A stretch of DNA of 63,827 nucleotides, counting the filler, from Reticulomyxa filosa (lineage: Eukaryota > Protista > Foraminifera), in the NCBI GenBank assembly GCA_000512085.1. It is 20 parts of 20 records of this genome, joined end to end, with 100 filler letters (N's around TTAATTAATTAA, not from the genome) between each part and the next. Parts side by side here need not be neighbours in the genome. Positions count along the whole stretch, not along the records: positions 54,868 to 59,852 come from ASPP01024389.1; 19 more parts are not named here. The stretch is one strand, 5' to 3'. The notes below the pieces were generated by a model that worked only from the letters and a program-made list of their open reading frames with translations, ran no database searches and was not told the DNA's origin. Both the position numbers and the translations under genes were made by a program. Below are positions 5,266 to 59,852 of the stretch, piece by piece (position 1 is the first letter of the stretch; every line of letters begins with the position of its first letter).

Positions 5266-8200
5266 CAAACATATTCGTAGATTCTTTTTTAATTTAATCA
5301 AATGAAGTGTTCAAGGGTTGGTGATGAAACACTCAATTATTTTCTCAATTTATAGATATTTATAAGATGTTCATGTTCTCCTTTTCTAATGGGAACTTAA
5401 AATTGTTGATTCGAACTTTTTGAAAAAATTTTATTTGATTACAAAAGAGACTTTAAAATTAAATTTTGAAAATTATGAAACTTTTTGAAATCATAATGTC
5501 TGCATTAAAATAAATAAAAAAAGAATTACAACACATGTTACATGTAAATAAAATCTTCTCACTTTTTGCAAAGTCTATTATAGCATATAAAAATGCCCTT
5601 ATTAATCATCAGCACAAAAAAAAAACATAAATAAATAACTTTTAATTTTTACTTGCACTTTATTTATCGCAAAAACGCAACATCTATGTTAATTGATATT
5701 TAAAAAAAAGTCAAATTTTCATTTATCATGCTTTACACGTTATGTTGTTTTCTTCAAAAAAAAAATTCAGTGCAAATGTAACGTCATTTTAATCAGTCTA
5801 ACATGTGCCAAGTTTAGTCATCACGTAAAAACAAACAAAAAGAAAAAATCTTTACATACCATTTAGCAAAAAAAAAGGAATATCGTTTTGATGAAAGAAA
5901 GACTAAGAAATGTTTTTAACTCTTTTTTTTTTTTAGTTGTCACCTCTTCAGTACAACTCAAATTATTATTTTTTAAAAAGTTAAACATTAATAATTTCTT
6001 CTATTTCTTTGATATTGAATACAAAAGACAATTTTCCAAGAATAAATTATTATAAGGAAAAAATTAAACGAGAAATGTTAGGAGCATCTAAACAGTGCTG
6101 TTAGTTCTAAATCCAATAATGTGAAAAAAAACGAATTAAAAGTTCGAAGCAAGCTTTTATTGTGACGTTTCTCTAATATTTGAGCATGCTTGACATCCCT
6201 CTTAACGACGAAAAAGACGTCAACAAGCCAAGTCTTATCAAAATTGACAAGTTCTGTCTTCCAGAAAAGTTTTCTTCTTAAACAGCTCTAGTAATCGATG
6301 ATAAGACTGTAATTTTTTTGAAAGCGACACGATTCGCATCTTCAACGTGATAACTCATGACTTTGTCTCAGCTCCTTATGAATTAACGATTATATATTTT
6401 CTTACGAATCTTATGTAAGTACCATTTCACTTCGTTACCTCCTAATAACTGCAGTTTAAACTTTTTCTAACAACAACAAAAATTTAATTTCTGTCCCCTT
6501 TATACAAACGAGAACACTTCTGTCCTAAGTACAGGAGAAGTTCCATATGAATGAGGGAATCCTTTTTTTCTTCAACAACCTTCACTGTCTTTCTTCTTTC
6601 ACTTTTTTGTTTTCTTATTTCTTTATCAGTGAGTTGTTTATCTCTTTAGTATTTAACCACTTTTATTTTCCTTTTCGAAAACTCTTGCAGTAATTACTTT
6701 CGTATTACACTTAGTGTTATCTCTAAATCTTCCTACACTCCTTTAAGTAGTATTGCTTTGGTTCGGGACGATGATGACTACAGATTGGTAACATAAACAA
6801 TTTTAAAGATATGGTGCTGCTCTTATTTATTCATTTTGTCAACAAGAATGGAATAGTACAAAATTCCTTTTGCAAGAAGAATATTTTACACAAGTATTTT
6901 TTATGGACATCCCGACGAAATGTGGACATATACGGAACAATCACTCAATTGTTGAAGGAACACGAAAAGAATATGTTCTGTGAATATTTGGATGAAATTA
7001 ATTTAGGAATTTCCGAAGAATATACCAATCAAATTATCCAAATTTTTTATGAATATCTTGAAAGCGTCTTAGAAAAACTTCAGTGTTGTGGATTAAAAGA
7101 TGTTTCAGATATTATCATAGAGATGCTTGATTTTAAAATGGATTTGTTGATGCCAGAAATTTAATAAATTTTTGGCTAATGATAACTTTTGTTTAATGAA
7201 ACAAACTTGTACGTTTTTAGGATTGTGCAATGAACGATAATTTTTTAAAATCAAAAGTTGATTATTCCTTGTTAAATGTTTAAAATGAAAGAAGAACATC
7301 CATGACAAAAAATTGTGTCATATAAAAATGTAACATAGTGTTCAACAGGTTCCGTTTTGAGGACACTAATTTTTCATTTTTTGAAAGTGAATGTTTGCTT
7401 AGCACAAAATGAAATGGATTGTGTTTTTTTTGTTAATAGATTGCTGATCATTAATCAAAATTTGATGTTTTTTTGTTTACAAAAATTGAGTTTAGCCGCG
7501 ATTTTGTTCATAACAGTAATCAAAATAGGATTGCTTTAAAGTTAATCATGTTGATGGGCGACAATTTCCATTTCTTCTTCGATTGTAAGATCTGTCATGA
7601 TTTGAAATTGGTCAGCTCTCTTTCTTTTAATGAGCTACCAATAACTGGCAAAAGTAATAAACGCCAATATGTCAATTACTCAAGTACTAACTGTGAAACC
7701 ACTCCAAAAAATTGACAGTAGTATCGGAATAATCATACATCAAAGTTTGCAGATTGTCATCCATTTGTAGTGGAAGTTCTTTTTGTGCATCATTCATATT
7801 ATTATTCTTATCAGATATACTAATTCCATTTAAGAATCACTGAAACAGAACATAAACGCAGGCATTGACAAAAACAAATTTCTTCTATTCTTGAAATCAT
7901 TCTGCCATTTCACCAAGTACATGCCAGGACTGGAAGAACTGCATGATATTTCCGAGAATATTGAATGGAATTACAAGCAACAATTAAATCATTTAATCCA
8001 CTAAACACAAGTATGTAAATATCGCTATTCGTTAAAATGCTGACATAATTTTATTTTGATCATAGCCATTCCAACAACTCAAATTCAATTTCATATATTT
8101 ACAGTCCAAGTTAACATGAAACGCGTTCCAAACCTTGGGTTAATGGAGATATTCGACTATATATTTACTATTGCAAGAAGGATAAGGATGAGCATAAATC

Positions 8201-54867: not shown

Positions 54868-55065
54868 GATAATACAATTCGATTTTGGGATATCCGATCA
54901 AATAAGAATGAATTGTATATGATCAAAGGAGATGATAATGAAGATTATGGAATATATTGTCTTACATTTATTGGATTGAAAAAGAAAAAGGAGACAAATA
55001 ATGTCAAATATGATTTGAATTTGTGTTATGGTTCATGGAAAGGTCCCATTCGTATTTGGGGATAA
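54868..55065 (+). CDS. WD40-family gene, 3' end
   Basis: DNTIRFWDIRSNKNELYMIKG..NLCYGSWKGPIRIWG*, paralogous to the C-terminus of 4021-5265. Confidence 0.85.
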   Translation, partial: DNTIRFWDIRSNKNELYMIKGDDNEDYGIYCLTFIGLKKKKETNNVKYDLNLCYGSWKGPIRIWG

Positions 55066-57339
55066 TTTCCTTTTTTGTTGAACAAAAAATGAAAATGTTT
55101 TTGTTTGAAAAGTTTAATTAAAAGAAAAGTATAAACTTGTTTGATTTAATTGATGCAAGCATTGAAAGATGTGTTCTATCTTATTTTGTTTAAAAAAATG
55201 AAAAAGTTTCTTCGTGTTTTTTAAAGAATTCAAAAGCATAATAAATGAATAAATTGCAAGATATTTCAAGATGTAATTTGAAATGAATCATATTGTCCTT
55301 TATAAAAGTTTACCCAAACTAACAGTGAATCATTGCAGATTGAACATCGATAATATAAGAATATTATTAAAAGATAGCGATTTTATGACTTTGATAAAAT
55401 GATTTCTAAATATGTTAAGTTCTTTGACAATATAATATTTAACTTAGTCTAAAGCATTTAAAGAAACGAAAGTCCGTAATTATATAATAAAAGAATGTAT
55501 GTTGATCATAACAACAGAGTTGATAATTTTTCATTTGATATTTGAAATAATTATTCAAAATAGAGTTCGAAGATTGATGATAAAATAAAGCAAAACAATT
55601 CAATTTTGACATAATAAAGTACAATACATTCAATTCTTTTATTTTTAAATAAATATATTGATACATCTTAGGAATAAGCACATTAACAAAAATATTTTTC
55701 AATAAATTTTTACCTATTGAAATGTCTCATAGTTGTCAAAATTATGCATTGAATGATTGGAAAGTATTTTTTTATTTTTATAAACACAAATTATGAGCTT
55801 AGCTTTGTTGTACACCAAATAAAGAACAAATCAGTAATTTGTTTTTAAGAATATATTGAAAATTGTGCAACTATGAAGAAATATTAGTAAATGTCTCACT
55901 CTTCTATACTCAGCTCTTTTCTGTCACTTGCTTTGTTTCCGCAATGACATAATAAGCAAAGTATGACTTGCGTACAACATTAAATGCACTTTCAAATATC
56001 TTAAATGTACACTCCATTGAGAATAATTTTAATCAATTTTTCTTTTCGAAAACACGAAAAACTGGATATTATGTCTTTGCTGAATAAGAAGCCAATCTGA
56101 AACCTCGTTCCTTGTGTCCTCATTAGACAACTTCTTCATATCAAATTAAATTTGATGAATAGTGTCAAAACAAAAAAAATTAAATGTCCTAATTCAATCA
56201 ATTGAATTATCGAAATTATGCAAATGAAATATATTCTTCCAGATATCGTATTTTACAAAGTGTAAATCATTTCAAGATCCTTAATAACAGATTTTATTGT
56301 CATTTTTAAAAAAAGTTAATTCAAAAAGAAAGGTACAACATCCATGTTTTCGATACTTCCATTATTTCAAAAAGAACACACCCGTCACAAACAATGTTTG
56401 ACAAATGGTATTACTTTTTACTGAAAATTCTCAATACAATAGTTCAACCTTTCATGCATTTCAATTTTCATTACTCAAATTATGTGCAATTTTTTTATTT
56501 CATTAATCAAATCAAAAATGTCAATGTAAAATATTTTTGTTTTCTCAAAAAGGGTCAGGTCACAGCCCCTTTTTCTAAAAAAAACTTCTTTGAGAATTAA
56601 TAGGAACGCTTTTACTGCGAAATTCACTATCAGTAAACCCATTTTCTCTTTTGCTAATGAAGCCAGGATGTTCACCGAAATTTTCCAGAAACGAAGGAAA
56701 TAAATCAATTTCCGACAGGCTTTTTCCCATGCAGGTACGTGAAATGCAGAAAATACTTTCTCTTTCAAGATAAGCATTTGTGCAGCGGTAGGTTTTGGTA
56801 TTAATATTTTTATTTTTGGAATGATAAATTGTATTAGTTTTAAATCCTAGCTTTTTTGTTTAATAAAGTCAAATATTGCGCTAAAATTTCTTTGATATTG
56901 TTTATGCCCAACATCTTCACGAGAAATTTTTGCGAAATTAATTTTTCCAAATTCTTTCGAAATGGCGATGTTAATGGGTATGCCTTTATATGATATAACA
57001 CGTTCGATTTCATTTAATTCTTTTTGAAATGTACAATAGTTTTTTGTTTCTTCTTGAATCTTTTTTTCCATATCTTCTTTTTGCTTAAAACATATCTTTG
57101 GAGAAATATTTTTTCTCTCTTGATTTTTTCAAGAATATCGAGCATACTTAAATAAAGAGTTATATATTGCACAATCATGTATAAACATATTTGCACAGAA
57201 TATGCTTTTACTTGAACGTTTTCAATAACTTTATCTAAATTTTTTAATGATTCCAAATTTTCTTGCTCAGTCTTTATTACAACATTCAAATTTTCACGAT
57301 ATGCATTGTCTTTTTCATCATTTTTCTTCTGCGAGTTGA

Positions 57340-58448
57340 TTAAAGATACTTGATGCTGGTTGGATAGGTGAACTCGTAAAAATATTCCAGAGCATGTAAT
57401 ATGGTGGAATGTCGTATTTCATTGTAGAAATCTTTGATATCAACAACGATAAAATAATGATTTTTTTCCAAGCTCTTTAGATAATTTACAACATCCAATG
57501 AGTTTTTAATACATGTATTGTATTGCTTAGGAATTTCTTTGAGAATTTCTTGTAATATAAGGTTATTAAAGGACGCGAATGGATATTTAACGGTATTATA
57601 TGAAGAAATAATAGGACGAAATGACGTGGGCACTTTTTCTATACTTTTTAGGATAGGAGATACTTTTGCAAGCTTGAGATTGTAATGATTTTCAGGAAAT
57701 TGAGAGGCGTTTTCTTTTGGAAGTTTCTGTTTTAGATAGAATCGAATCGCTTTTTGTTCTGCAATAATTTCAGCATTAGTTTTAGTTGTTTCCTTGAGCA
57801 TGGGTAGAGACACCATTTTTGCCCAAAGTTTTTCATATAATGCATACGAAATAAATGCAAGACCTTCATTATGATCGGTTATAAATATTAAGAACTTATT
57901 TGTTTTACACCACATTTCAATTTTCTTTTTTGAAGTCAGGCTATTTATGTATCGAGGTTTTTGCCCAAGAATGTCGATGTTGGTAATACTTTCAATATCC
58001 TTTTTTATCGTTTGTTTTTCCTTATAACTTATTAGTTTTAGAAACTCACTATGTATTTCTTTCATGGATGCATCTTTTTCTTTCTTCTTTTTGATTAAGT
58101 AGGAAATTTTATTATTAAATTGTTGAATAGCATTTTCGACAATATTAATATTACGTTTACTAAGCCTTTTTTTCTAAAGGCAAACTGGAATCCGTAATAA
58201 AGAAATTGTGGAATTTCTGCAGGAATATTGTAATTGATACTTTTTCCGGAATCATCGATGAGAACGTGAATATGTAATTTTAGGGCAAATAACACAATTT
58301 GTTTTAAAAATTCTTTTGGTTCTTCTTTTCGTTTTTTAAGAAACTGTTGATAGTATTCACAATTCTGCAGATATAACTTATTTTGTATGTTTATTCTTCT
58401 TGCATTAAAGAAATTACTATTATTTTTATATTTATTTATATAAGGCAA
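57340..58448 (-). pseudogene. Penelope-like reverse transcriptase, N-terminal half
   Basis: FLYYGFQFAF (LxxGLxF-like), FITDHNEGLAF (TDKNLG/ADKG-like), KVPTSFRPIISS, CIKNSLDVV and VVDIKDFYNEI; ends before any YxDD motif. Confidence 0.8.
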
Positions 58449-58479
58449 TTTTGAGATTAATATTCGCTTGATTCTTCCT

Positions 58480-59852
58480 TCATATGTGTACTGCCAAAGG
58501 GTTCGGAAGGATTACCATGTTTGCTTTTTCTCCATCCTTTCTTGTATGGCCGTGAGGATGATGCCTTTTTTTCCGATACATTGCTTGTTTCGTCGGAGGA
58601 CTGGACGTCATCCCAGTATACACATATCCTTCTATACCAAACCGTTTCATGTATCTTCTGACAAACGAGATGGAGGTGTTCACGGGAACAAATTCCTCGT
58701 TTGGTGGATCTGATGGATGCGAGTACATACATGAGAATTGATGCCAATATGGACATTGGTCGCCATGTCGACATTTTGCTTTGTTTTTGGGAATCATAAT
58801 AGTGGAAGACGCTTTCTTCGAAGAAGTTGATTCTTTTTTGTCTTTTTTTCCAGGTTTTACTTTTTCTCGGGAAGTATAATCCGAAGGGTTTCCCGAATCA
58901 ACTTTTTTTATTGCAAGTTTTTGTGATTTTATAGATTCAATTGCGGAATCTTGTTGTCTTTGTTTTGCTTCAATTTTTTTCAATTGCTGCAAAATAATGT
59001 CCAATTTACTATTTGTTTCATGTTCAACTTCTCTTTCTGGTCTTTCACGTCGAGGAGCATGTTCCGAATCACTTTCTTCATTCTCTGAGGAATCGTCTTC
59101 AGATTCTTTTTGTTCCATTTCTTTTTTTAATCGATCAGCAAGATAAGCGCCATAATGTGATATACTCACAAATTTTCCATGACGTTTTTTTGATAGCTCG
59201 TTTACTTGCTGGTTTGTAAGATTTTGTTTTACATAGTTTTCGTCAAGTTCAAAAAAACTTTTCAAGAACCATATAACAAGACCAGTTCTATGGATGCCGG
59301 CAGTACAGTAACATAAATATTTTTTCCATTTTTACACAATTTTTGAATTACATCAAGCAACTTTTTTGCATGAGCAACTTTCCAGGATGTCCAAGAGGAT
59401 GCAACAATGTTGAAATGTTTTACACATTGCTTTTTGCAATTTGCTCAGATTGTACACAACTTTCCGAAGCAAGATTAATTATTGCATCAAAAGGACAACT
59501 TTCACTTCTTTTAAAATCTCTTTTTGGTAATGCGCCAAAGAATATTTTTCCAAAGCCTTCTTGGATTTCAATATTTGCGTTTTCTTTGGTTTTATTATTA
59601 CTAGGACAGAGATTTTGATGATGATTTTTTCCGCATATTTTACATGTTATGGTAGGACAATCAATGAGAAAATGCATTTGGCAACAGTTTCTGCACATTG
59701 ATTTTGAGATTGCTTTTGGGATTCTTGCATGGCAATTTTCAATTATGTGATTGACTTCTTCACAACGAATGCATTTGGCAAATAATCCCATTTGAATTGC
59801 ATCTTTCCGCAATTAGTTTTTTATAGTATAACAGACGATTATTCAAACGCTC
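58480..59852 (-). pseudogene. Element ORF1: 3 CCHC zinc knuckles, PTP/DSP phosphatase, coiled coil, CCCH finger (frameshifted)
   Basis: CIRCEEVNHIIENC, CRNCCQMHFLIDC, CKICGKNHHQNLC; KIFFGALP..DAIINL; KNGKNIYV[H]CTAGIHRTG (CTAGIHRTG at 59281-59307); CRHGDQCPYWHQFSCMYSH. Confidence 0.75.

What the first reader, a model, noticed from the sequence alone, without database searches (positions are those of the whole stretch)
57340..59852. Penelope-like retroelement whose ORF1 fuses zinc knuckles, a CX5R phosphatase and a CCCH finger
Seen in the sequence, minus strand, in order: three CCHC knuckles; a DSP-like N-terminal segment (KIFFGALP..DAIINL); a phosphatase P-loop; an acidic/coiled-coil region; a C-x5-C-x7-C-x3-H finger; then PLE-type RT motifs (GFQF, TDHNEG, RPIISS, IKNS, DIKDFY). 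Established: RPIIS/IKNS/DxxxLY motifs typify Penelope-like RTs, and endonuclease-lacking PLEs (Athena, Coprina) carry accessory upstream ORFs. Inference: I do not know of a PLE or other retroelement described with an embedded PTP/DSP domain. This may be an undescribed family that carries its own RNA-end-processing or host-signalling phosphatase. This copy is dead (frameshifts, stops, RT cut before YxDD, 5' end lost at the contig edge).
Basis: partly seen in the sequence, partly recalled or inferred. Interest (0 to 1): 0.85.

Follow-up and report, generated by a model that had tools for sequence, protein, structure and literature searches.

The report
Foraminiferan retroelement carrying a phosphatase
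This is a decayed copy of a Penelope-like retrotransposon in the foraminifer Reticulomyxa filosa whose Gag-like first protein contains a small cysteine phosphatase between zinc fingers; a second, diverged copy with an intact first ORF shows the combination is conserved, and I found no retroelement described with it.

Summary
The piece is a whole 4,985-bp Reticulomyxa filosa contig.

On the minus strand it encodes, in order:
- three CCHC knuckles;
- a DSP-type cysteine phosphatase, broken by two frameshifts;
- an acidic coiled-coil stretch;
- a C-x5-C-x7-C-x3-H finger;
- the N-terminal half of a reverse transcriptase (RT) with Penelope-like N-terminal motifs.

The RT ends after motif A. No later RT motif is detectable in the remaining 2.5 kb.

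A second R. filosa contig (L001) has the same order:
- Its ORF1 is an intact 1,305-codon ORF with knuckles, phosphatase (IHCISGIHRTG) and CCCH finger. The phosphatase scores Pfam Tc-R-P 1e-6 and archaeal Tk-PTP 2e-9.
- The same RT family follows, at 47% identity.

Codon-position identities (pos2 0.71 > pos1 0.55 > pos3 0.44) show long purifying selection on both ORF1 and the RT.

The three nearest RT relatives come from metagenomes. They have ORF1s without zinc fingers or a phosphatase.

No GIY-YIG, hammerhead ribozyme, telomeric repeat or terminal repeat was found. Assignment to Penelope-like elements (PLEs) rests on motifs and nearest relatives, not on a phylogeny. Only two copies could be examined, and both RTs are damaged.

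Verdict: a real new variant of an endonuclease-less PLE-like element. The phosphatase's substrate is unknown.

The parts
59606..59773 (-). Three CCHC-type zinc knuckles at the start of the readable ORF1. Knuckle 1 is canonical (C-x2-C-x4-H-x4-C). Knuckles 2 and 3 are C-x2-C-x3-H-x4-C.
   Evidence: Read directly. All Cys and His positions are conserved in L001 ORF1 residues 759-818. Pfam gives only a weak zf-CCHC_5 hit.
59191..59557 (-). DSP-type cysteine phosphatase domain, broken by two frameshifts. The first is near 59423-59440. The second is a 1-nt shift just 5' of the Cys codon, near 59308. The P-loop CTAGIHRTG lies at 59281-59307.
   Evidence: The domain is colinear with the intact domain of L001 ORF1, residues 831-975. 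That domain scores Pfam Tc-R-P 1.1e-6 (above cut-off) and DSPc 3.6e-6. Against PDB it scores 2e-9 to 9e-9 for Tk-PTP and ShufPTP, and Foldseek gives the same top hits. The P-loop is the best-conserved DNA stretch between the two copies, 79% over 58 nt.
58903..59106 (-). Acidic run (ESEDDSSENEESDSEH) followed by a coiled-coil-like linker.
   Evidence: Read directly. L001 has a longer acidic, Lys/Glu-rich linker at the same place.
58717..58773 (-). CCCH-type finger with C-x5-C-x7-C-x3-H spacing.
   Evidence: Read directly. The same spacing occurs in L001 (CRYGDACRNWDKYACVFSH). The DNA is 74% identical over 84 nt. Pfam gives only weak zf-CCCH hits.
58480..58482 (-). Stop codon of ORF1. The next frame is open from 58511, so the two frames overlap by about 30 nt.
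58098..58511 (-). N-terminal region of the RT protein in a different frame from ORF1. It contains a GxKF/Y-like motif, YGFQF, at 58176-58196.
   Evidence: The stretch is open for 138 codons in DNA where about 1 codon in 12 is a stop by composition. L001 has FGWKF at the matching place. GxKF/Y is a PLE N-terminal motif (PMC8557442).
58165..58175 (-). A8 run (AGAAAAAAAGG) where the RT reading frame shifts by -1.
   Evidence: There is no stable RNA structure downstream (z = +0.84). A mutation or a homopolymer miscall is more likely than programmed frameshifting.
57343..58173 (-). RT from the DKG-like motif to just past motif A. It contains TDHNEG (57847-57882), FRPIISS (57601-57621), CIKNS (57499-57513) and VVDIKDFY (57415-57447). 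A stop follows at 57340-57342.
   Evidence: Pfam RVT_1 E=1e-4, profile positions 3-94 of 205. It is 47% identical to R. filosa P0002 (E=4e-37). It matches P0003 at 32%, P0004 at 28% and P0005 at 25% identity; all three are RT proteins.
54868..57339 (.). The rest of the contig. No RT motif B-E or thumb is detectable. The minus strand carries open stretches of 134, 93 and 123 codons (56478-57418) with no homologues.
   Evidence: tblastn and tblastx with the L001 RT and P0003-5 found nothing. Pfam found nothing.

Best explanation
The region is a dead, 3'-truncated copy of an endonuclease-less, Penelope-like retroelement of Reticulomyxa filosa.

The family has two coding parts.
- ORF1 is a Gag-like nucleic-acid-binding protein. 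Three CCHC knuckles and a CCCH finger flank a small atypical cysteine phosphatase of the DSP fold. This phosphatase is closest to archaeal Tk-PTP-type and PFA-DSP-type enzymes.
- ORF2 is an RT with PLE-type N-terminal motifs.

The phosphatase is an integral, long-conserved part of ORF1. It is not a neighbouring host gene.

Inferred mechanism, not shown: ORF1 coats the element's RNA through its zinc fingers. That places the phosphatase on the ribonucleoprotein. My preferred guess, at about 35-40%, is that it trims phosphates on a nucleic-acid end or a phosphoanhydride. Examples are an RNA 5' tri- or diphosphate, or a 3' phosphate that blocks priming at a free DNA end. An element without an endonuclease depends on such free ends. 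The alternative, at about 30%, is that it dephosphorylates ORF1 itself or a host protein.
For: Organism:
- The piece is a whole R. filosa contig, and P0001 is its GenBank gene model.

Linkage:
- L001 is R. filosa contig ASPP01026434.1. It carries knuckles, DSP and CCCH in one uninterrupted 1,305-codon ORF. The chance of that is about 1e-60 at 0.10 stops per codon.
- The same RT family follows that ORF.
- The window is colinear with L001 2290-5001 at 45-56% amino-acid identity.

Selection:
- Identity by codon position is 0.55 / 0.71 / 0.44 over 389 aligned codons. The same pattern appears in the knuckle+DSP, P-loop, CCCH and RT segments.
- The P-loop is the best-conserved DNA segment between the copies.

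Phosphatase identity:
- Pfam Tc-R-P 1.1e-6 and DSPc 3.6e-6.
- All top Atlas clusters are DSP-PTPases.
- PDB hits: Tk-PTP and ShufPTP at 2e-9, AtPFA-DSP1 at 2e-3. Foldseek agrees.

RT type:
- RVT_1 hits.
- GxKF-like and DKG-like motifs are present.
- L001 adds motif B, YLDD, FLDICI and an R(F/Y)INP thumb-like motif.
- The relatives P0004 and P0005 carry TDKNLG, RPI(V/I)G, YIDD and a YQKP...HP thumb. Their precomputed Pfam families are DUF8422, RVT_1 and HTH_animal.
- The PLE hallmarks are taken from PMC8557442.

Substrate hint:
- In the HMMER alignment, the Asp in the IPDF motif of Tk-PTP aligns to Ser in L001 (ISSW), and the window has ASSW at the matching place. I recall this Asp as the general acid.
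- The P-loop G-x-HRTG matches PFA-DSP. From memory, PFA-DSPs cleave phosphoanhydrides.
Against: - Only two copies could be examined, and both have damaged RTs.
- In L001 the RT N-terminus is riddled with stops, and the 3' half has two frameshifts and an in-frame TGA, while ORF1 is intact. That fits domestication of ORF1 as well as it fits a recently active element.
- No hammerhead ribozyme, GIY-YIG, telomeric repeat, pseudo-LTR or target-site duplication was found. The element's ends and its mobility are therefore not shown.
- No RT phylogeny was run.
- The DKG motif is degenerate: DHNEG in the window and NDNDG in L001.
- The nearest non-Reticulomyxa relatives lack the phosphatase.
- No RNA or read evidence exists, because no sequencing run was listed.
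- The substrate inference rests on an alignment of two sequences and on a 64.6-pLDDT model.
Confidence: 0.7

Rival explanations
1. The knuckle-DSP-CCCH gene is now a host gene derived from retroelement ORF1. It is kept by selection for a cellular role. The adjoining RT sequences are decaying relics rather than parts of a currently mobile element.
For: In L001, ORF1 has 0 stops in 1,305 codons. The 522 bp between ORF1 and the RT core carry 12-15 stops in every frame. The RT 3' half has two frameshifts and one in-frame stop. Only two RT-bearing R. filosa proteins were found among 1.84 billion representatives, so copy number may be low.
Against: The window copy has its frameshifts inside the phosphatase itself. 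The RT cores keep 253- and 277-codon open frames and show the same codon-position signature of selection as ORF1. Both loci keep ORF1 and RT adjacent, although the proteins have diverged to under 50% identity. The assembly is fragmentary, so copy number is unknown.
Confidence: 0.2
2. The adjacency is chance. An RT fragment inserted next to an unrelated host zinc-finger phosphatase gene.
For: GenBank annotates the two ORF1 products as ordinary proteins ('RING zinc finger-containing protein', 'Kid domain containing protein'). The window RT is truncated.
Against: The same order, orientation and spacing occur in two loci whose proteins are only about 47% identical. Both parts were under purifying selection over that divergence. 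Chance insertion twice in the same relation is implausible. A segmental duplication of a dead RT would not preserve RT motifs and long open frames.
Confidence: 0.03
3. The RT belongs to a separate, undescribed RT lineage that only resembles PLEs in a few N-terminal motifs. Examples would be a sister group of PLEs or a domesticated rvt-like gene.
For: Only 5 hits appeared in 1.84 billion proteins, the non-Reticulomyxa ones at 25-32% identity. The DKG motif is degenerate. No HHR, pseudo-LTR, GIY-YIG or telomeric repeats were found. A profile of the family hits prokaryotic and group II RTs ahead of TERT in PDB.
Against: The GxKF-like and DKG-like motifs lie at the right spacing before RT motif 1. 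P0003 has ADKG. P0004 has a YQKP...Y...S.HP thumb and HTH_animal and DUF8422 families. The ORF1+RT layout without an endonuclease matches Athena and Coprina. The L002 contig ends overlap, as in tandem PLE copies.
Confidence: 0.15
4. Same element, different mechanism. The phosphatase acts on proteins, either ORF1 itself or a host regulator. This would resemble the virion-packaged VH1 phosphatase of poxviruses. It would not act on nucleic-acid ends.
For: The best sequence and fold matches are protein-tyrosine phosphatases of archaea, Tk-PTP and SsoPTP. MAP-kinase phosphatases follow.
Against: The Asp in the IPDF motif of Tk-PTP, which I recall as the general acid, aligns to Ser in L001, and the window has Ser at the matching place. 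The P-loop G-x-HRTG and the overall alignment also match PFA-DSP. The domain is flanked on both sides by zinc fingers of RNA-binding types. None of this is decisive.
Confidence: 0.3

Closest known systems
Endonuclease-less Penelope-like elements (Athena, Coprina; Gladyshev & Arkhipova 2007, as summarised in PMC8557442)
   Same: The RT has N-terminal GxKF/Y- and DKG-type motifs and no GIY-YIG endonuclease. A separate upstream ORF1 with a coiled-coil region lies in a different frame from the RT. The hosts are protists.
   Different: ORF1 here carries three CCHC knuckles, a DSP phosphatase and a CCCH finger. No hammerhead ribozyme, reverse-complement telomeric repeats or pseudo-LTRs were found. 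The DKG motif is degenerate. Placement within PLEs has not been tested by phylogeny.
Metagenomic relatives P0003, P0004 and P0005 (loci L002-L004)
   Same: They belong to the same RT family: the alignment runs from the DKG motif region onwards, with YxDD and the later motifs shared with L001 (25-32% identity to the window RT). They have no endonuclease and an upstream ORF1. The ends of contig L002 overlap, so it is tandem or circular.
   Different: Their ORF1s are basic or coiled-coil proteins without knuckles, phosphatase or CCCH finger.
Non-LTR retrotransposon ORF1 proteins with an accessory enzyme (the esterase of CR1/L2-type ORF1p, PMC3905857)
   Same: A Gag-like ORF1 combines nucleic-acid-binding modules, sometimes zinc knuckles, with a hydrolase domain of unknown role in retrotransposition.
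   Different: The retroelement class and the enzyme differ. There it is an SGNH esterase. Here it is a cysteine phosphatase.
Small archaeal PTPs (Tk-PTP 5Z59, 5Z5A, 5Z5B; SsoPTP) and plant/fungal atypical DSPs (AtPFA-DSP1, Siw14)
   Same: A roughly 150-residue DSP fold with an HCx5R(S/T) P-loop. PDB scores are 2e-9 (Tk-PTP type) and 2e-3 (PFA-DSP1). The G-x-HRTG loop matches PFA-DSPs.
   Different: Those are stand-alone cellular enzymes. Here the domain is embedded in a 1,300-residue zinc-finger protein linked to an RT. The Asp of the Tk-PTP IPDF motif is not conserved.
Virus-encoded DSPs (baculovirus RNA 5'-phosphatase BVP 1YN9; poxvirus VH1)
   Same: A mobile genetic parasite carries its own cysteine phosphatase. 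BVP acts on RNA 5' ends. BVP appears among the fold matches (E about 6e-4).
   Different: The similarity is only distant. No HCTHGxNRTG signature is present. This is an analogy of role, not membership.

Membership tests
Penelope-like elements (PLE) | N-terminal GxKF/Y motif upstream of the RT core | tested here: met
   Window YGFQF (58176-58196), L001 FGWKF, P0004 LGSKF, P0005 LGPKF. The motif definition comes from PMC8557442.
Penelope-like elements (PLE) | DKG motif (variants DKA, DKT and DK are accepted in known clades) | tested here: inconclusive
   At the aligned position the window has TDHNEG, L001 has NDNDG, P0003 has ADKG, and P0004 and P0005 have TDKNLG. The two Reticulomyxa copies lack the Lys.
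Penelope-like elements (PLE) | Complete RT core (motifs 1-7) plus PLE-type thumb | tested here: not met
   The window has only motifs 1 to A, and nothing later is detectable. The family does have them. L001 shows QGDNDSP, YLDD, FLDICI and RFINP across frameshifts. P0004 shows YIDD and YQKP...HP.
Penelope-like elements (PLE) | GIY-YIG endonuclease (EN+ clades only) | tested here: not met
   No GIY...YIG pattern occurs in any frame of the window, L001 or L002-L004. This is consistent with an EN-minus type.
Penelope-like elements (PLE) | Hammerhead ribozyme motifs and pseudo-LTR or tandem structure | tested here: not met
   Rfam at E<=1 gave no hammerhead in the window or in L001-L004. No long direct or inverted repeats occur in the window or L001. 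Only the metagenomic L002 has overlapping ends. The contigs may not reach the element termini.
Penelope-like elements (PLE) | Short reverse-complement telomeric repeats at the 3' end (EN-minus clades) | tested here: not met
   No runs of common telomeric units occur in the window or L001. I do not know the R. filosa telomere repeat, so the test is weak.
Penelope-like elements (PLE) | RT groups with PLEs, as sister of TERT, in a phylogeny | not testable with these tools
   No reference PLE or TERT sequences could be obtained. A profile against PDB hit generic RTs. The AF2 model of P0003 was too poor to search (pLDDT 42).
Cysteine phosphatases of the DSP/PTP fold | HCx5R(S/T) P-loop | tested here: met
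   L001 has IHCISGIHRTG. The window has CTAGIHRTG, with a frameshift where the His codon should be.
Cysteine phosphatases of the DSP/PTP fold | Significant profile or sequence match over the whole domain | tested here: met
   Tc-R-P 29.5 bits (cut-off 27) and DSPc 3.6e-6. Tk-PTP and ShufPTP 2e-9 over residues 7-114 of 158. Foldseek gives probability 1.00, TM 0.54-0.61.
Cysteine phosphatases of the DSP/PTP fold | General-acid Asp on the loop preceding the P-loop | tested here: inconclusive
   In the HMMER alignment the Asp of Tk-PTP IPDF falls on Ser in L001 (ISSW), and the window has ASSW at the matching place. An Asp five residues upstream in L001 is Asn in the window. Only two sequences and a medium-confidence model are available.
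Retroviral-type CCHC zinc knuckle | C-x2-C-x4-H-x4-C spacing | tested here: met
   Knuckle 1 fits exactly. Knuckles 2 and 3 are C-x2-C-x3-H-x4-C. All three are conserved in L001. Pfam support is weak.

The most novel reading that the evidence does not exclude
Foraminifera may host an active lineage of endonuclease-less PLE-like retrotransposons whose Gag-like protein carries a catalytically active phosphatase. That phosphatase would work on the element's own RNA or on the DNA end used for priming, and would be required for retrotransposition. It would be the first retroelement-encoded phosphatase and a new step in the retrotransposition cycle.
Probability: 0.3. Interest if true: 0.75.

Novelty: new variant of a known kind. 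Interest (0 to 1): 0.6.

Why it matters
- Retroelement ORF1 proteins are poorly understood, and their accessory enzymes are rare. The esterase of CR1/L2 ORF1p is the known example.
- A conserved cysteine phosphatase set between zinc fingers of RNA-binding types in ORF1 would point to a phosphate-removal step in retrotransposition that has not been described. Elements without an endonuclease must use pre-existing DNA ends, so such a step would matter especially for them.
- The finding also extends PLE-like elements to Rhizaria. The 2021 survey of PLE diversity (PMC8557442) does not mention that group.
- It corrects two GenBank names: 'RING zinc finger-containing protein' and 'Kid domain containing protein'.
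- The intact L001 domain is small, about 150 residues, and can be assayed directly.

Tried and rejected
- The search for homologous proteins with the RT piece, with L001 ORF1 region 780-1200 and with the knuckle+DSP piece gave nothing or only the query itself. The first search missed P0002, which HMMER later found. These blanks therefore say little.
- Metagenome scans with the ORF1 alignment found nothing. With the RT alignment they found only the already known L002 contig.
- Viral-contig scans found nothing.
- The look-up of sequencing runs listed no run, so read laying was not used and no read or RNA evidence exists.
- Rfam found no hammerhead or other family apart from one sub-threshold snoRNA hit in L003.
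- Repeat and tandem-repeat searches in the window and L001 found only low-complexity matches.
- Programmed -1 frameshifting at the A8 run is not supported. There is no downstream structure, and L001 shifts in the other direction at the matching place.
- The search for the missing RT half in 54868-57340 found nothing with relaxed tblastn.
- The AF2 model of P0003, from a 7-sequence alignment, reached pLDDT 42 and was not used for a fold search.
- PDB sequence searches with the window's own broken pieces were uninformative.
- I did not search with any joined or read-through version of the broken window ORFs or with the spliced GenBank model.
Full report
**What the sequence is.** The piece 54868-59852 has 29% G+C and contains no N. 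A search of the RT fragment against 1.84 billion representative proteins returned five hits. The best was P0001, 97% identical over residues 427-664. P0001 is GenBank ETO09072.1, 'RING zinc finger-containing protein' of Reticulomyxa filosa, and its only contig is 4,985 bp long. The piece is therefore one whole contig of the R. filosa draft assembly. P0001 is a spliced gene model of this same locus. It bridges the frame breaks with small introns, and it is not independent evidence. I did not search with that joined model or with any read-through of the broken frames. All pieces were searched apart, by reference.

- Three CCHC knuckles lie at 59732-59773, 59657-59695 and 59606-59644.
- The phosphatase N-terminus reads GFGKIFFGALPK...CPFDAIINL (59471-59557).
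- A frame break lies near 59423-59440.
- The middle of the domain is in another frame (VKHFNIVASSW...NGKNIYV, 59310-59423).
- A second, 1-nt break lies directly before the catalytic Cys.
- The P-loop CTAGIHRTG is at 59281-59307.
- An acidic run and a coiled-coil-like stretch occupy 58903-59106.
- A C-x5-C-x7-C-x3-H finger lies at 58717-58773.
- ORF1 stops at 58480-58482.
- The RT follows, first for 138 codons in another frame (58511-58098, with YGFQF).
- After a -1 shift on an A8 run (58165-58175), the RT continues for 277 codons (58173-57343). These carry TDHNEG, FRPIISS, CIKNS and VVDIKDFY, and end at a stop at 57340-57342.

Pfam gives RVT_1 at E=1e-4, covering profile positions 3-94 of 205. 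It gives only faint phosphatase and zinc-finger hits on the broken pieces.

No later RT motif can be found in the remaining 2.5 kb, even with relaxed tblastn.

Loss of the 5' end at the contig edge is not shown. A stop lies 11 codons upstream of the first knuckle.

**The co-occurrence test.** The second hit, P0002 (ETO07158.1, R. filosa, 47% identity, E=4e-37), lies on a different contig of 8,275 bp, ASPP01026434.1 (L001).

Immediately upstream of its RT, L001 carries an uninterrupted ORF of 1,305 codons that runs to the contig edge. By composition, 0.10 of codons would be stops, so the chance of such an ORF is about 1e-60.

Residues 759-1180 of that ORF contain the same modules in the same order:

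- three knuckles;
- ESFGKIFFSGLPK...SCPFDAIICL...NGKNILIHCISGIHRTGLV;
- an acidic, Lys/Glu-rich linker;
- CRYGDACRNWDKYACVFSH.

The window aligns colinearly with L001 2290-5001 at 45-56% amino-acid identity.

Over 389 aligned codons, nucleotide identity is 0.55, 0.71 and 0.44 at codon positions 1, 2 and 3. The same order appears separately in the knuckle+phosphatase, P-loop, CCCH and RT segments. This is the signature of long purifying selection on all parts while the two lineages diverged.

At the DNA level the best-conserved stretch is the P-loop, 79% over 58 nt.

Chance adjacency of an RT fragment and a host gene is therefore very unlikely. A duplicated dead RT would not have kept its motifs or its open frames of 253 and 277 codons.

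**The phosphatase.** The intact L001 domain was tested in four ways.

- Pfam Tc-R-P scores 1.1e-6, at 29.5 bits against a cut-off of 27. DSPc scores 3.6e-6.
- Its language-model neighbours are all DSP-PTPase clusters: PTP-SAK, Tc-R-P and DSPc.
- phmmer against PDB gives the Thermococcus Tk-PTP and the related ShufPTP at 2e-9 to 9e-9 over nearly the whole domain. The plant atypical DSP AtPFA-DSP1 follows at 2e-3.
- A single-sequence AF2 model (pLDDT 64.6, pTM 0.61) finds the same structures first with Foldseek. SsoPTP, MKP5, PFA-DSP1 and baculovirus RNA 5'-phosphatase come next.

It is a genuine small cysteine phosphatase.

In the HMMER alignments, the Asp in the IPDF motif of Tk-PTP falls on Ser in L001 (ISSW). 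I recall this Asp as the general acid. The window has ASSW at the matching place. The G-x-HRTG loop is the PFA-DSP form. From memory, cysteine phosphatases that lack the general acid tend to cleave phosphoanhydrides. Examples are the RNA 5'-triphosphatases BVP, PIR1 and Mce1, and the PFA-DSPs, which act on inositol pyrophosphates. This is a hint, not a result.

**The reverse transcriptase.** The family is very sparsely represented. Beyond the two R. filosa proteins, only three metagenomic proteins matched, at 25-32% identity.

Aligned together, they share these motifs:

- a DKG-type motif: P0003 ADKG, P0004 and P0005 TDKNLG, window TDHNEG, L001 NDNDG;
- K-x-HK-x-P-x2-RPI(I/V)(S/G);
- (I/L)K(N/D)(S/T);
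- D-x4-Y;
- in the complete members, Q/MG-x3-A/SP, Y(L/I)DD and FLD.

P0004 also has a YQKP...Y...S.HP thumb and precomputed Pfam families DUF8422, RVT_1 and HTH_animal.

Upstream, the window has YGFQF and L001 has FGWKF, where P0004 and P0005 have LG(S/P)KF. Craig et al. 2021 (PMC8557442) name GxKF/Y and DKG, the RT core and the thumb as the diagnostic PLE regions. They describe EN-minus PLEs (Athena, Coprina) as lacking GIY-YIG. Their Fig. 1 legend also notes that an ORF1 can be separated by a frameshift and marks coiled-coil regions among the PLE architectures.

The Reticulomyxa elements fit that description, and no GIY-YIG pattern exists in any locus. Other PLE hallmarks were tested and not met:

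- no hammerhead ribozyme;
- no terminal or tandem repeats in the window or L001;
- no runs of common telomeric units.

The contigs may simply not reach the element ends.

A family profile against PDB only confirmed 'an RT'. The AF2 model of P0003 was too poor to use. I therefore call the element PLE-like. Membership is probable but not demonstrated.

**Is the phosphatase typical of the wider group?** It is not. The metagenomic relatives have upstream ORFs that are basic or coiled-coil proteins without knuckles, phosphatase or CCCH finger. L002 is notable because its two ends overlap: the last 40 residues of its 3' ORF repeat the first 40 of the contig. That fits a tandem or circular arrangement, ORF1-RT-ORF1. 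On present evidence the knuckle-DSP-CCCH ORF1 is specific to the Reticulomyxa lineage. Scans of metagenome and viral contigs for more examples found none.

**State of the two copies.** The window copy is dead. It has two frame breaks inside the phosphatase, neither on a long homopolymer. It has one break on an A8 run in the RT, and the RT is truncated after motif A. The A8 site resembles a -1 slippery heptamer. However, there is no downstream structure (z = +0.84), and L001 shifts the other way at the matching place. I read it as a mutation or a homopolymer miscall.

In L001 the picture is asymmetric. ORF1 is perfect. The 522 bp before the RT core have 12-15 stops in every frame. The RT 3' half has two frameshifts and an in-frame TGA. 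That asymmetry is the main support for the rival reading, that ORF1 has been domesticated or is kept for its own sake.

**Most likely working.** This part is inferred. ORF1 is a Gag-like chaperone that binds the element's RNA through its knuckles and CCCH finger, so it carries the phosphatase into the ribonucleoprotein. I favour, at roughly 35-40%, a nucleic-acid-end or phosphoanhydride substrate. Candidates are the 5' tri- or diphosphate of the RNA, or a 3' phosphate on the DNA end that an endonuclease-less element must use as primer. A protein substrate, ORF1 itself or a host factor as with poxvirus VH1, is nearly as likely, at about 30%. Nothing here measures activity.

**Novelty.** Full-text searches found no retroelement described with a phosphatase domain. 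They combined Penelope-like or retrotransposon with phosphatase, ORF1, accessory domain or Reticulomyxa. The PLE survey mentions neither Rhizaria nor Foraminifera. The library is incomplete, and Repbase and Dfam were not available.

I rate the finding as a new variant of a known kind: an EN-minus PLE-like element with a new ORF1 architecture. Interest is 0.6. It would be higher if a genome-wide survey shows an active family and the enzyme proves to act on nucleic-acid ends.

Noticed in passing
window 56478-57418, minus strand: Three successive open stretches of 134, 93 and 123 codons lie just downstream of the truncated RT. Each of the two longest is expected less than 0.01 times by chance at about 0.09 stops per codon. 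They have no Pfam hit and no similarity to the L001 RT 3' half, L001 ORF1, or the relatives' ORFs. The GenBank model P0001 uses two of them as terminal exons. Their origin is unexplained.
   Followed up: partly
window about 58473-58637, minus strand: The GenBank model joins ORF1 (…RYMKRFG) to the RT frame (RIKRILISK…) by removing a GT..AG interval of about 165 nt. If that intron is real, ORF1 and the RT would be one fusion protein. PLEs are known to retain introns (PMC8557442). There is no RNA evidence.
   Followed up: no
window 58165-58175, minus strand: The -1 frame change inside the RT N-terminus falls exactly on AGAAAAAAAGG, a slippery-type A AAA AAA heptamer. No stable downstream RNA structure exists. 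It may be a homopolymer sequencing error in this draft assembly.
   Followed up: yes
L001 13-2286: L001 ORF1 has a further 758 residues upstream of the knuckles. They are Lys/Glu-rich, acidic and coiled-coil-like, with no Pfam family. The window copy has a stop 11 codons before its first knuckle, so the two lineages may differ in ORF1 length.
   Followed up: partly
L001 3931-5815: ORF1 is intact, but the RT is broken. The 522 bp before the RT core have near-random stop density. The RT 3' half has two frameshifts and an in-frame TGA at 5543-5545. This asymmetry suggests selection on ORF1 independent of the RT.
   Followed up: partly
L002 (JGI metagenome 3300021855, contig Ga0213854_1148992) 1-4929: The contig ends overlap by at least 120 nt: the same 40 residues are encoded at both ends. 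The ORF1+RT element of about 4.8 kb was therefore assembled as a tandem or circular unit. It is the closest non-Reticulomyxa relative, and its ORF1 has no zinc fingers or phosphatase.
   Followed up: partly
GenBank ETO09072.1 (P0001) and the L001 product P0010: The public names 'RING zinc finger-containing protein' and 'Kid domain containing protein, partial' miss the retroelement nature of these loci. The ETO09072.1 model splices out the phosphatase P-loop.
   Followed up: yes
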